Origin: Lama guanicoe
Lineage: Eukaryota
Direction: 5' to 3'
Assembly (NCBI GenBank): GCA_013239625.1
Contig: MU054541.1
Location: 16,714,567 to 16,778,566, forward strand
Length of the DNA: 64,000 nt
A program made the translations under genes and the position numbers. The notes under the pieces were generated by a model, which did no database searches, was not told the DNA's origin, and was given only the letters and a program-made list of their open reading frames with translations. Shown piece after piece: positions 8,167-21,554 of the stretch (its first letter is position 1; every line of letters starts with the position of its first letter).

Positions 8167-8310
8167 GAAGGGAGGGTAGCTCGGTGTTAGAGTGCGTGCC
8201 TAGCATGCACGAGGTCCTGAATTCAACCCCCAGTGCCTCCGTTAAAAATAATAATAATAAATAAATGAGCCTCGCTACCTCCCACCACTAAAAAAAAGAA
8301 AAAACAATTA
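8167..8310 (+). mobile_element. tRNA-derived SINE, camelid Vic-1-like, full length with TSD
   Basis: Pol III A-box (tagctcggtg) and B-box (gaattcaacc). The body gtgcgtgcctagcatgcacgaggtcctg...cccagtgcctcc is followed by an AAT-rich linker and an A-tail. A 10-bp TSD AAGACATTAA lies at 8157-8166 and 8311-8320, at a TTT/AAGA L1-endonuclease-type site. Confidence 0.9.
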
Positions 8311-18509: not shown

Positions 18510-18529
18510 TGAGTGAGCAGATGAGACAG
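18510..18529 (+). other. Candidate 20-nt microexon
   Basis: Upstream ctgac branch-like motif, acceptor ctctttcccccattccag| and consensus donor CAG|gtaagt. Confidence 0.25.
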
Positions 18530-20536
18530 GTAAGTGGGTGAGCACCGAGCTGGCTGTTGAGCCCAGAGCACCTCTTGCAACTCTTGCGGGGTTAGGAAAA
18601 CAAAGCCCTTACTTGTGCAAACAGAACATGTCAACAGAGTGTGCACAGTGATGCCAACAAGCGTCTTGGGACTCAAAACTTGGGCAATGGAGATAATCTA
18701 CCTTGATTATAGAGGCGTCACTCAATCCAGAATTTTGGCAAAAAATAAAAACTTCTTTAATGTTGATAATGTTTTAGAACAAAGAGTCAAACTGTGACAG
18801 GTCTTGGGACCATTCAGAGTTCAAGGCCCGCAGCTCGCGTCCGGAGCGGGTGCAGTGGCGCTCAGGGGCACGGGAGCGCGCATGTGGCCCGGTGCTAACG
18901 CAGGTGGTTCCGCTGGCGTAGCATTTCGCGGGTGCCTGCAGTTTCCAGGCGTTGGGGATCAGTATGGCCGTCTGTCCTCTCGTTTGAAAAGTGGAGATGA
19001 AATCATGGGCCCGCATGCGAATTCCGTCTCTTCTGGTGGAAATTCTCCCAGGGAGATTTCTGCTAAGACTACACTTGGAGAGAATCCACGGGCCCTGGAG
19101 GCGTTCCTGCAGCAGTGTCACGCTGACCCCTCCTGTAGGTGGGTGTCCCTCGCGGCAGCTTGTCTGGTGGCGACGCCGAGTCCTTCGGCTCAAGGAGCGC
19201 CTCCTGCAGCCGGGACGAGGGACGGAGCAGCAGCGGCCACTCTTTCATCCACGAGAAAGGAGAGGTTTCTTCAGGTGGACGCGTGAGGCATGTTTCTTCA
19301 GGAGGGAGTCGCAGCGTGCTCTTCCTGGCCCCTCCAATCTGTCCGACGGGGTTTCCGAGGACCCTAGACCGTTCGTCACGGCCTGTGCTTCGTGGTCTGT
19401 GCTGTGTGGGACCCGCACCCACTGTACTCGCAGGGCTGGAGAAGCCTGCGTGAGGCCGAGGTGCTCGGAGCCTCGTGGGTGACACCTGTGGTAGTGACTC
19501 TAGTATTTTAGCTCAGCATTTCATCAGGTTTTTATATGTTAATATTTTATTTGGAGCAGTATTGTGATTTTCCAAGTGATTTCTCTTATGGAAACTCCTG
19601 GATCCACGAAGGACACAGGCAGGTATTTGAGAGCTTTCTTCCTGCTCCCGACAACCGTTGCCACCAGGGCACAGTAACGTCCAAAGGGGGGACCTGCAGC
19701 CCGAGCGCTCCCTGTCAGAGCCCTTCTCCCGTGGCCTTGGCCCTGCGCGGAGGGCCTGGGGTCACACTGCCACCCCTTCCTCGTGTGGCCCTCTGCCGGC
19801 CCACGGCCCAGAGGGAGGGAAGACACCCGATGTGCTCAGGCAGAACGCATCCCAGCCACAGCTGCCTTCACAGGGGCTGTTGTGTGGACTGACGAGCCTG
19901 GCGGTGCGGGGAGCCGTCTTCACTCACCATGGGACAGAGGCCCCGGCCCGAGGCGGCGGCTGCGGGGAGGCCCGCCCTCTGCTCCCTGGGTCCGCTGTTC
20001 TCTCGAGACTTGGGTGGAGCTGCTCCTTGGCCAGTGTGCCTTGGAAGGTCCGGGCCTCAGTGTGTGGGGTCAGGGGTCAGGGTGACGGGGACCCAGGGTG
20101 TGCGTGGTGTGATTTTCCTTTGTACAAGACTACGTGCTTCTCTGGACTGTGTCCTGGAACAAAAGTAGTGTTGCTTCCAGCAGAGGGTGAAAGCGGGGGA
20201 AAGTCAGTTGGCGTTTGCAGGTCCCGCTGCCGCCAGGCTCAGGCGGCAGGCGCCACCGCCGCCTGCAGGTAAAGGCCCAGCGCCTCAGACTCCGCGTTAG
20301 TGGGGTGTTCCTCTGGGTGTCACCTCGGAAGGAAGGAAAGCTCGTGTTGGGGGCAGTGTCTGTTTTCGCCTGGGTGGGCCGACCACACCCCGTGAGTAGG
20401 GAGACCCTGGATTTGAATACAGGTCTGTGTGACGACCAAAATGTCTAAATTTCATGGTAGATGTTTTCCTTCTGATGAGACTGATGTGGAAAAGTCAAGT
20501 GGAAGTAGGGGCATAAGGGTGCTGGAAACAGGTGCG

Positions 20537-20634
20537 CAGGCAGGTGACTGAAGGATGATGGTCTTACTTCAGGGTGAAATCTCACCATCATCCCACCTTG
20601 AATTAAGACCATCATCGTTTCAGTCATTTGCTTG
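20537..20634 (+). ncRNA. Long stem-loop (pre-miRNA-like or structured intronic RNA)
   Basis: 20537-20576 pairs with 20594-20634: 34 Watson-Crick pairs, 5 G-U pairs, one C/U mismatch, one bulged G and a 17-nt loop. The hairpin is seen directly, but its identity as an ncRNA is inferred. Confidence 0.45.
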
Positions 20635-21554
20635 ACTTTGTGAGCAGGTAAGTTTGGTTGACTTGTGAAGCGAAAGAGCTGTAGGTGAGAAAAGAGAAAT
20701 GAGATGTGAGCCACGTTACAGGTGTCTGGGGGGCCGTGTGGAGGGGAGGGAGAGCCGGGTGGGGTCCGGCAGTGGGGGGGGTGCTCCTAAAGGCTCCTAA
20801 GGCAAGAGAAGCCATCCTTGCTTTTTGTTTTTTTTTAAGGAAGAGGGACCGCTTCCAGGAACCTAAGGACCCCGTGACGCTGGCTAAGCGTTGCTGCAGA
20901 AGAGGCGGGCTTCTCCGAGGGCGCACGCGTCAGTTCAGGGTGTTTGCTGGCTTCCTTGGCTCGCCTGGAAAACTGGCGAAACCTGGCACAGGAGCAGGCT
21001 CCTAGGGTTTGCACTGACTGCAGAAGTTGGGTATGGGTTTACGTGACAGTTGCACGCTGGTCCCTTCACTTCGGTTGTGTTAGGAAGACCCCGACGCGGG
21101 GGACGGCCCGCTCCGGTCTCCTCGGCCTGTCTGTGAGCCAGACTCTTCCTTCTGGGAAGCTGAAGGCAAGAGTTTTATTGGGATTATTTTATTACAGCTT
21201 CTTGCTGCGAAACGAAGGGTAATTGGCTAATCGAGGCTCTGGTAGCAATTTCAGAGATTGGAAAATTGGTTCCCGTCTGCCACTTGAACAAATAAGCAGC
21301 TTCTCAAATGTACAACCAACTAGTTTATTCAAAACGGTGTCTTTACAGGGAGGCCCCCTGTTCCCTGGTTTATTATGGTCTGTGTGAGTTAGAAGACTTT
21401 CCCCCCTCAGCCCCCGAAACCCAGAAATGCAGGTGCGCCTCCGTCACAGGCTTACGCGCAGAGCGCCCATGACAACGGGGCAGAGGCTGAGGCTGCCTGG
21501 TCAAGGGGGCTTCGTCATCTGACCCGAGACTCGGCGGGAGAAGTGAGTTACCAG

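What the first reader, a model, noticed from the sequence alone, without database searches (positions are those of the whole stretch)
20537..20634. 40-position stem-loop whose imperfections are G-U pairs on the + strand: candidate unannotated intronic miRNA or structured RNA
Seen: caggcaggtgactgaaggatgatggtcttacttcagggtg (20537-20576) pairs with caccttgaattaagaccatcatcgtttcagtcatttgcttg (20594-20634). There are 34 Watson-Crick pairs, 5 G-U pairs (20539, 20543, 20544, 20553, 20572), one C/U mismatch, one bulged G (20617) and a 17-nt loop. On the - strand those five positions would be A/C mismatches, so the fold favours the strand inferred to be transcribed. Known: Microprocessor substrates are ~35-bp stems with >=10-nt loops, and long duplexes are also ADAR substrates. 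Inference: this is a functional hairpin that I cannot match to any miRNA or MITE I recall. Caveats: the stem is slightly long and I see no CNNC motif at the usual distance downstream.
Basis: partly seen in the sequence, partly recalled or inferred. Interest (0 to 1): 0.75.

Follow-up and report, generated by a model that had tools for sequence, protein, structure and literature searches.

The report
Unique long hairpin, function untested
A real, single-copy 39-base-pair inverted repeat sits in non-coding DNA; it is most likely a local inverted duplication made by a replication error, and nothing tested here shows that it is a microRNA.

Summary
Positions 20537-20576 pair with 20594-20634 through 34 Watson-Crick and 5 G-U pairs. 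There is one C/U mismatch, one bulged G and a 17-nt loop. As RNA the + strand folds at -57.5 kcal/mol (z -11.4) and the - strand at -48.1. With DNA parameters the strands are equal, so the strand preference exists only for RNA. It is the only inverted repeat of this quality in the 64 kb.

No Rfam family matches, no second copy lies in the window, and there is no target-site duplication. The loop holds a third partial copy of the arm core, including a perfect 10-mer, so the locus is a nested quasi-palindrome. That fits replication template switching better than a two-armed transposon.

The all-G-U pattern is weak evidence for selection: a neutral model gives P about 0.03-0.07. The microRNA features are mixed. 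The stem is 40/41 positions against an optimum of 33-39, there is no CNNC and no basal UG at the junction, but an apical GUG is present.

No mammalian genome or repeat library was available. Published base rate: about 0.9% of genic template-switch hairpins of miRNA size are annotated miRNAs. Verdict: real feature, probably neutral, function unproven.

The parts
20537..20576 (+). Left (5') arm of the hairpin, 40 nt, G-rich. It carries the G of all five G-U pairs.
20577..20593 (+). 17-nt apical loop. Together with 20575-20576 it forms a third, partial reverse-complement copy of the left-arm core: 20575-20593 against 20553-20571, 15 of 19. This includes a perfect ACCATCATCC / GGATGATGGT match.
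   Evidence: I2, D2; I9
20594..20634 (+). Right (3') arm, 41 nt, T-rich, with bulged G20617 and U20603 opposite C20567.
20491..20499 (+). AAAGTCAAG, a perfect complement of CTTGACTTT at 20631-20639. In the 231-nt context fold, seven of these pairs replace the two outermost hairpin pairs and extend the base.
   Evidence: sequence
20645..20653 (+). CAG|GTAAGT, a full match to the 5' splice-site consensus 11 nt after the hairpin base. It is one of two in the window, both on the + strand, and the count is not significant by itself.
   Evidence: 13% of shuffles have at least 2

Best explanation
This is a single-copy, lineage-restricted inverted duplication that arose at the DNA level. The most likely mechanism is one or two short-range replication template switches (fold-back copying of the neighbouring strand) at a pre-existing quasi-palindrome. 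These created a perfect ~40-bp reverse-complement copy of 20537-20576 next to its source. Since then the arms have picked up five transitions, one transversion and one 1-nt indel. The region is non-coding, and its base skews suggest it is transcribed on the + strand. The transcript would therefore carry a 39-bp, nearly perfect dsRNA hairpin. Such a duplex is a possible substrate for ADAR, Drosha or Dicer, but the locus is most likely a neutral by-product and not a selected gene. Shown here: the structure, its uniqueness in the window, the nested third copy, the absence of a target-site duplication and the absence of an Rfam match. Inferred: the template-switch origin, transcription, and neutrality.
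For: The hairpin is exact and highly non-random. It is the only inverted repeat of its class in 64 kb. No other copy of the arms or flanks lies in the window. The loop contains a second reverse-complement copy of the arm core with a perfect 10-mer, which I estimate at about 2e-4 by chance. It differs from the arm by one clustered 5-nt block, not by scattered point changes. That gives a three-copy nested quasi-palindrome, which is the substrate and the product expected of template switching (PMC10710096: conversion of quasi-palindromes, repeated events at one locus). The flanks show no TA or 8-bp target-site duplication. With DNA parameters both strands fold equally, -27.4 against -26.9. The five G-U pairs have neutral probability 0.03-0.07, and the window's G>C and T>A skew pushes mutation toward G and T on the + strand. 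All 14 DNA or unlabelled runs from four organism labels hold 100% of the sampled words. No RNA run holds more than 15%, so no assembled abundant transcript covers the hairpin. The base rate of such hairpins being annotated miRNAs is 0.9%.
Against: No outgroup sequence could be obtained, so the before and after states that define a template-switch event were not seen. All five wobbles put G in the left arm and U in the right arm (P about 0.002-0.004 under the neutral model). Neither neutrality nor RNA selection predicts that arrangement. The 15% divergence between the arms could also suit an old transposon. Partial RNA holders exist in five studies, and what they cover is unknown.
Confidence: 0.5

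Rival explanations
1. It is a young, lineage-specific miRNA or hairpin-siRNA gene. The + strand transcript is cut by Drosha/DGCR8 and Dicer, or by Dicer alone, into ~22-nt RNAs, and wobble pairs are tolerated because selection keeps the RNA stem.
For: The + strand RNA is favoured by 9.4 kcal/mol. All five transition differences are G-U on the + strand (P 0.03-0.05). Pairing is 97.5%, the loop is 17 nt, and an apical GUG sits at 20574-20576. G-U wobbles lie at positions 7-8 from the base, where wobbles are reported to help processing. The skews support + strand transcription. RNA-labelled runs from five studies (four firmly labelled RNA, two only guessed) hold 2-5 of the 33 sampled words.
Against: No Rfam family matches: the best hit scores 21.6 bits against a gathering score of 96, E = 1. 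The stem is 40/41 positions, outside the 33-39 optimum, and a 39-nt variant kept about 22% processing (PMC5340965). There is no CNNC and no UG at the basal junction. Counted from the base, both unpaired sites fall in the bulge-depleted zones. The prior is about 0.9%. No small-RNA evidence could be obtained.
Confidence: 0.12
2. It is a relic of a short palindromic non-autonomous DNA transposon (a MITE of the MADE1 type), one of many diverged copies in the genome.
For: Its size (98 bp), its two ~40-nt arms and short loop, and arm ends that begin with CAGGCA all resemble such elements; the last point is from my own recollection of Tigger-type ends and was not tested. The 15% divergence between arms fits an old insertion.
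Against: There is no TA or 8-bp target-site duplication. No second copy lies in 64 kb at low stringency. The third internal copy is not part of a two-TIR design. The arm motif has no hit in viral or metagenome collections or in paper texts, but these hold essentially no mammalian DNA, so this counts for little.
Confidence: 0.18
3. It is an exonic structured element. The hairpin would lie at the 3' end of a first, non-coding exon that ends at the CAG|GTAAGT at 20647/20648, where it could modulate U1 access, splicing or translation, or act as a non-canonical Drosha target in an mRNA.
For: A perfect 9-of-9 donor consensus lies 11 nt downstream. The sequence upstream is GC- and CpG-rich. Small, similar word shares in several RNA runs could reflect a short exon end.
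Against: Two such 9-mers in the window is not significant, since 13% of shuffles reach that count. CpG observed/expected is 0.63 across the whole window, so no distinct promoter island stands out. There is no convincing acceptor upstream and no ORF. An exon that contained the whole hairpin should give at least 30% of the words, not 15% or fewer.
Confidence: 0.08

Closest known systems
Template-switch-generated hairpins and de novo miRNA loci (Monttinen, Frilander and Loytynoja 2023, PMC10710096)
   Same: A near-perfect reverse-complement copy lies directly beside its source in transcribed non-coding DNA. Later point changes include wobbles. There are signs of more than one event at the same quasi-palindrome.
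   Different: The ancestral state was not observed here. The stem is longer than most annotated cases, and no expression or processing evidence exists.
Canonical Microprocessor substrates (pri-miRNA hairpins; feature set of PMC5340965)
   Same: High pairing, an apical loop within the compatible 3-23 nt range, an apical GUG, and wobbles in the basal stem.
   Different: The stem is 40/41 positions against 36 +/- 3. There is no CNNC, no basal UG at the junction, no Rfam family and no small-RNA data.
Palindromic MITE-derived hairpins (MADE1 / mir-548 type; from my own knowledge)
   Same: About 80-100 bp, almost entirely two inverted arms, folding into a long near-perfect hairpin on either strand.
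   Different: No target-site duplication, no second copy found, and a third internal arm copy.
Long intramolecular dsRNA substrates of ADAR (from my own knowledge)
   Same: A 39-bp nearly uninterrupted duplex in a probably transcribed region.
   Different: It is much shorter than inverted-SINE duplexes. Editing was not tested.

Membership tests
Canonical animal miRNA precursor | Stem length 36 +/- 3 nt (33-39), bulges counted | tested here: not met
   40 positions on the 5' arm and 41 on the 3' arm, against the range in PMC5340965. The miss is narrow.
Canonical animal miRNA precursor | At least 82% pairing and an apical loop compatible with processing (3-23 nt; 8-16 enriched) | tested here: met
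   39 of 40 positions paired. The loop is 17 nt, compatible but just above the enriched range.
Canonical animal miRNA precursor | Sequence motifs: CNNC downstream, basal UG, apical UGU/GUG | tested here: inconclusive
   There is no CNNC in 20621-20648. The nearest UG is at 20533-20534, 3 nt before the base. GUG sits at the apical junction, 20574-20576. That is one of three motifs.
Canonical animal miRNA precursor | No unpaired bases in the bulge-depleted zones | tested here: inconclusive
   Counted from the base, the bulge is at position 18 and the mismatch at 31-32, both inside the zones. Counted from the loop they are at 24 and 10, both outside. The source warns against applying the rule to stems of non-optimal length.
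Canonical animal miRNA precursor | Discrete ~22-nt 5p/3p reads with 2-nt 3' overhangs | not testable with these tools
Canonical animal miRNA precursor | Match to a described miRNA family | tested here: not met
   Rfam 15: the best hit is 21.6 bits against a gathering score of 96, E = 1. Nothing reaches the gathering score.
MITE / palindromic DNA transposon | Target-site duplication flanking the terminal inverted repeats | tested here: not met
   The flanks are ...caggtgcg | hairpin | actttgtg... There is no TA and no 8-bp repeat.
MITE / palindromic DNA transposon | Many dispersed genomic copies | tested here: inconclusive
   None in the 64-kb window. No mammalian genome or Dfam library was available. 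Zero hits in metagenome and viral collections are uninformative.
Template-switch (TSM) hairpin | Reverse-complement copy adjacent to its source, without a target-site duplication | tested here: met
   Arms are 17 nt apart with no TSD, and a second partial copy lies in the loop.
Template-switch (TSM) hairpin | Outgroups lack the copy, and one four-point switch explains the change | not testable with these tools
ADAR dsRNA substrate | A-to-G mismatches in RNA reads over a long duplex | not testable with these tools

The most novel reading that the evidence does not exclude
The hairpin is a de novo, camelid-lineage small-RNA gene born by template switching at a quasi-palindrome. It would be transcribed from the + strand directly upstream of a consensus 5' splice site, so that Drosha cropping and U1 recognition compete. 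Its stem would be kept by selection that admits only G-U changes.
Probability: 0.08. Interest if true: 0.45.

Novelty: new member of a known kind. Interest (0 to 1): 0.2.

Why it matters
If it were processed, it would be a dated example outside primates and mice of a miRNA created in a single replication error. It would also be a case of a hairpin placed against a splice donor. As it stands, it is one more of the many hairpins that genomes produce. Its main value is as a locus for testing the template-switch model once camelid and outgroup alignments and small-RNA data are applied.

Tried and rejected
- **Rfam:** E-value and gathering searches gave only chance-level plant miRNA hits.
- Local whole-window utilities (and scripts 25, 29, 30 and 50) did read the window file that contains them.
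- **ORF route to other assemblies:** a protein word search with the 89-aa minus-strand ORF that spans the hairpin found no candidate, so it says nothing about copy number.
- **Arm motif elsewhere:** zero hits in metagenome contigs (two patterns), viral contigs and paper full texts. These collections hold essentially no mammalian DNA.
- **Host gene:** long ORFs, two composition-based exon scores and Pfam on ten candidates gave nothing credible, so the host gene and the 'intronic' status stay open.
- **Promoter island:** rejected, because CpG observed/expected is 0.63 across the whole window.
- **Splice-donor enrichment:** not significant.
- **Earlier notes of this scan:** none cover this window.

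Full report
**Observation**

The sequence at 20537-20634 folds exactly as described. RNAfold gives a single hairpin of 39 pairs at -57.5 kcal/mol. Shuffles average -22.2 +/- 3.1 (z -11.4, 0 of 200 as good).

A script counted 34 Watson-Crick and 5 G-U pairs. The G-U pairs are 20539/20632, 20543/20628, 20544/20627, 20553/20618 and 20572/20598. C20567 lies opposite U20603, G20617 is bulged, and the loop is 20577-20593 (17 nt).

The - strand folds at -48.1 kcal/mol (z -8.4), where the five wobbles become A/C mismatches. With DNA energy parameters the two strands are equal, -27.4 against -26.9. The strand preference is therefore real, but only for RNA.

A scan of the whole window shows this is by far the best short-range inverted repeat in 64 kb.

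**Anatomy beyond the finding**

The loop is not arbitrary. Positions 20575-20593 are a second reverse-complement copy of the left-arm core 20553-20571, matching 15 of 19. Perfect TGAA and ACCATCATCC blocks surround one 5-nt block that differs completely. I estimate a perfect 10-mer complement inside a 17-nt loop at about 2e-4 by chance. The locus is therefore a nested quasi-palindrome: a left arm, a short inner partner and a full outer partner.

In a 231-nt context the hairpin persists. A further 9-bp complement, 20491-20499 against 20631-20639, competes with the two outermost pairs.

A full CAG|GTAAGT 5' splice-site consensus lies 11 nt after the stem (20645-20653). Two such 9-mers in the window occur in 13% of shuffles, so the count alone is not significant.

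**What it is not, as far as could be tested**

- No Rfam family matches. The best hit scores 21.6 bits against a gathering score of 96, E = 1. The only hit above a gathering score in the window is a borderline tRNA-like match elsewhere.
- No other copy of the arms or flanks occurs in the window, even at word size 7.
- The flanks carry no TA or 8-bp target-site duplication.
- The arm motif has no exact match in metagenome or viral contigs or in paper texts. These collections contain essentially no mammalian DNA, so this result is weak.
- No ORF runs through the hairpin on the + strand.
- No credible coding exon or host gene was found in the window.
- G>C and T>A skews persist across the window. 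They agree with + strand transcription but are indirect evidence.
- CpG observed/expected is 0.63 across all 64 kb. The GC-rich stretch upstream is therefore not a distinct promoter island.

**The G-U argument**

From a perfect duplex, each transition gives G-U on one strand and A/C on the other. A simulation that uses the arms' own composition gives these probabilities:

| Outcome | Probability |
|---|---|
| All five transitions give G-U on the + strand | 0.03-0.05 |
| All five favour the same strand, either one | 0.06-0.07 |
| All five place G in the left arm and T in the right arm | 0.002-0.004 |

The regional mutation bias toward G and T on the + strand pushes in the same direction. The pattern is suggestive at best.

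The last row in the table is the most unusual result, and RNA selection does not predict it. It hints at one directional process. Candidates are C-to-T changes in the right arm, four of five in a CC context, or A-to-G changes in the left arm. It cannot be polarised without an outgroup.

**miRNA likeness**

I compared the hairpin with the feature set of PMC5340965.

- Pairing is 97.5%, which is favourable.
- The 17-nt loop is compatible with processing, and an apical GUG is present.
- The stem is 40/41 positions, just outside the 33-39 optimum. In that study a 39-nt variant kept about 22% processing.
- CNNC is absent, and the nearest UG lies 3 nt before the stem base.
- Counted from the base, the bulge (position 18) and the mismatch (position 31-32) fall in the two bulge-depleted zones. 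Counted from the loop they do not, so this test is inconclusive.

**Reads and relatives**

The look-up of sequencing runs listed 14 DNA or unlabelled runs from four coded organisms that hold all 33 sampled words of 20430-20730. Six runs listed as RNA, from five studies, hold only 2-5 words each; four are firmly labelled RNA and two are marked as guesses that may be DNA.

The locus is therefore fixed and near-identical in a group of close relatives. No indexed RNA assembly contains the whole stretch. What the RNA runs cover is unknown.

A protein word search with the ORF spanning the hairpin found nothing. No orthologue could be examined.

**Mechanism**

The best-supported reading is a DNA-level inverted duplication by short-range replication template switching at a quasi-palindrome. 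This process makes a perfect stem in one event, can strike the same locus repeatedly, and is followed by point changes (PMC10710096).

That study also gives the relevant prior. Of 6,054 genic template-switch hairpins of miRNA size in the human lineage, 57 (0.9%) are annotated miRNAs.

When transcribed, the hairpin would be a 39-bp dsRNA. That makes it a plausible occasional ADAR, Drosha or Dicer substrate, but this part is inference.

| Reading | Confidence |
|---|---|
| Neutral template-switch hairpin | 0.50 |
| Old MITE relic | 0.18 |
| Young miRNA or siRNA gene | 0.12 |
| Exonic element beside a splice donor | 0.08 |
| Unexplained remainder | 0.12 |

**Verdict**

The feature is real and precisely described. 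It is a new instance of a known kind. Function is unproven, and by the base rate unlikely. Other first-stage notes on the same genome list at least ten similar pre-miRNA-sized hairpins. This agrees with such structures being common.

Noticed in passing
window 1-64000: CpG observed/expected is 0.63 at 50% GC across the whole 64 kb. That is far above the usual mammalian bulk value, which I recall as about 0.2-0.25. The region looks like a CpG-rich, possibly subtelomeric or high-recombination domain.
   Followed up: partly
window 8170-8241 (+): Rfam gives a tRNA match just at the gathering score (29.7 against 29 bits), but ARAGORN calls no tRNA. It is probably a fragment of a tRNA-derived SINE.
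   Followed up: partly
window 18527-18535 and 20645-20653 (+): The window's only two perfect CAGGTAAGT 5' splice-site consensus 9-mers both lie on the + strand, 2.1 kb apart. The - strand has none.
   Followed up: partly
window 20822-20837 (+): A T-run (tttttgttttttttt) lies about 190 nt downstream of the hairpin. It could be the poly(A) tail of a minus-strand retroposon or a Pol III terminator-like run.
   Followed up: no
window 19926-19932 (+): A Kozak-like caccATGG opens a GC-rich ORF of about 80 codons with no recognisable family. It was read by eye only.
   Followed up: no
window 20537-20634: All five wobble pairs have G in the left arm and T in the right arm. If the right arm changed, four of the five would be C-to-T in a CC context. 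The directional pattern is unexplained (P about 0.002-0.004 under the neutral model).
   Followed up: partly
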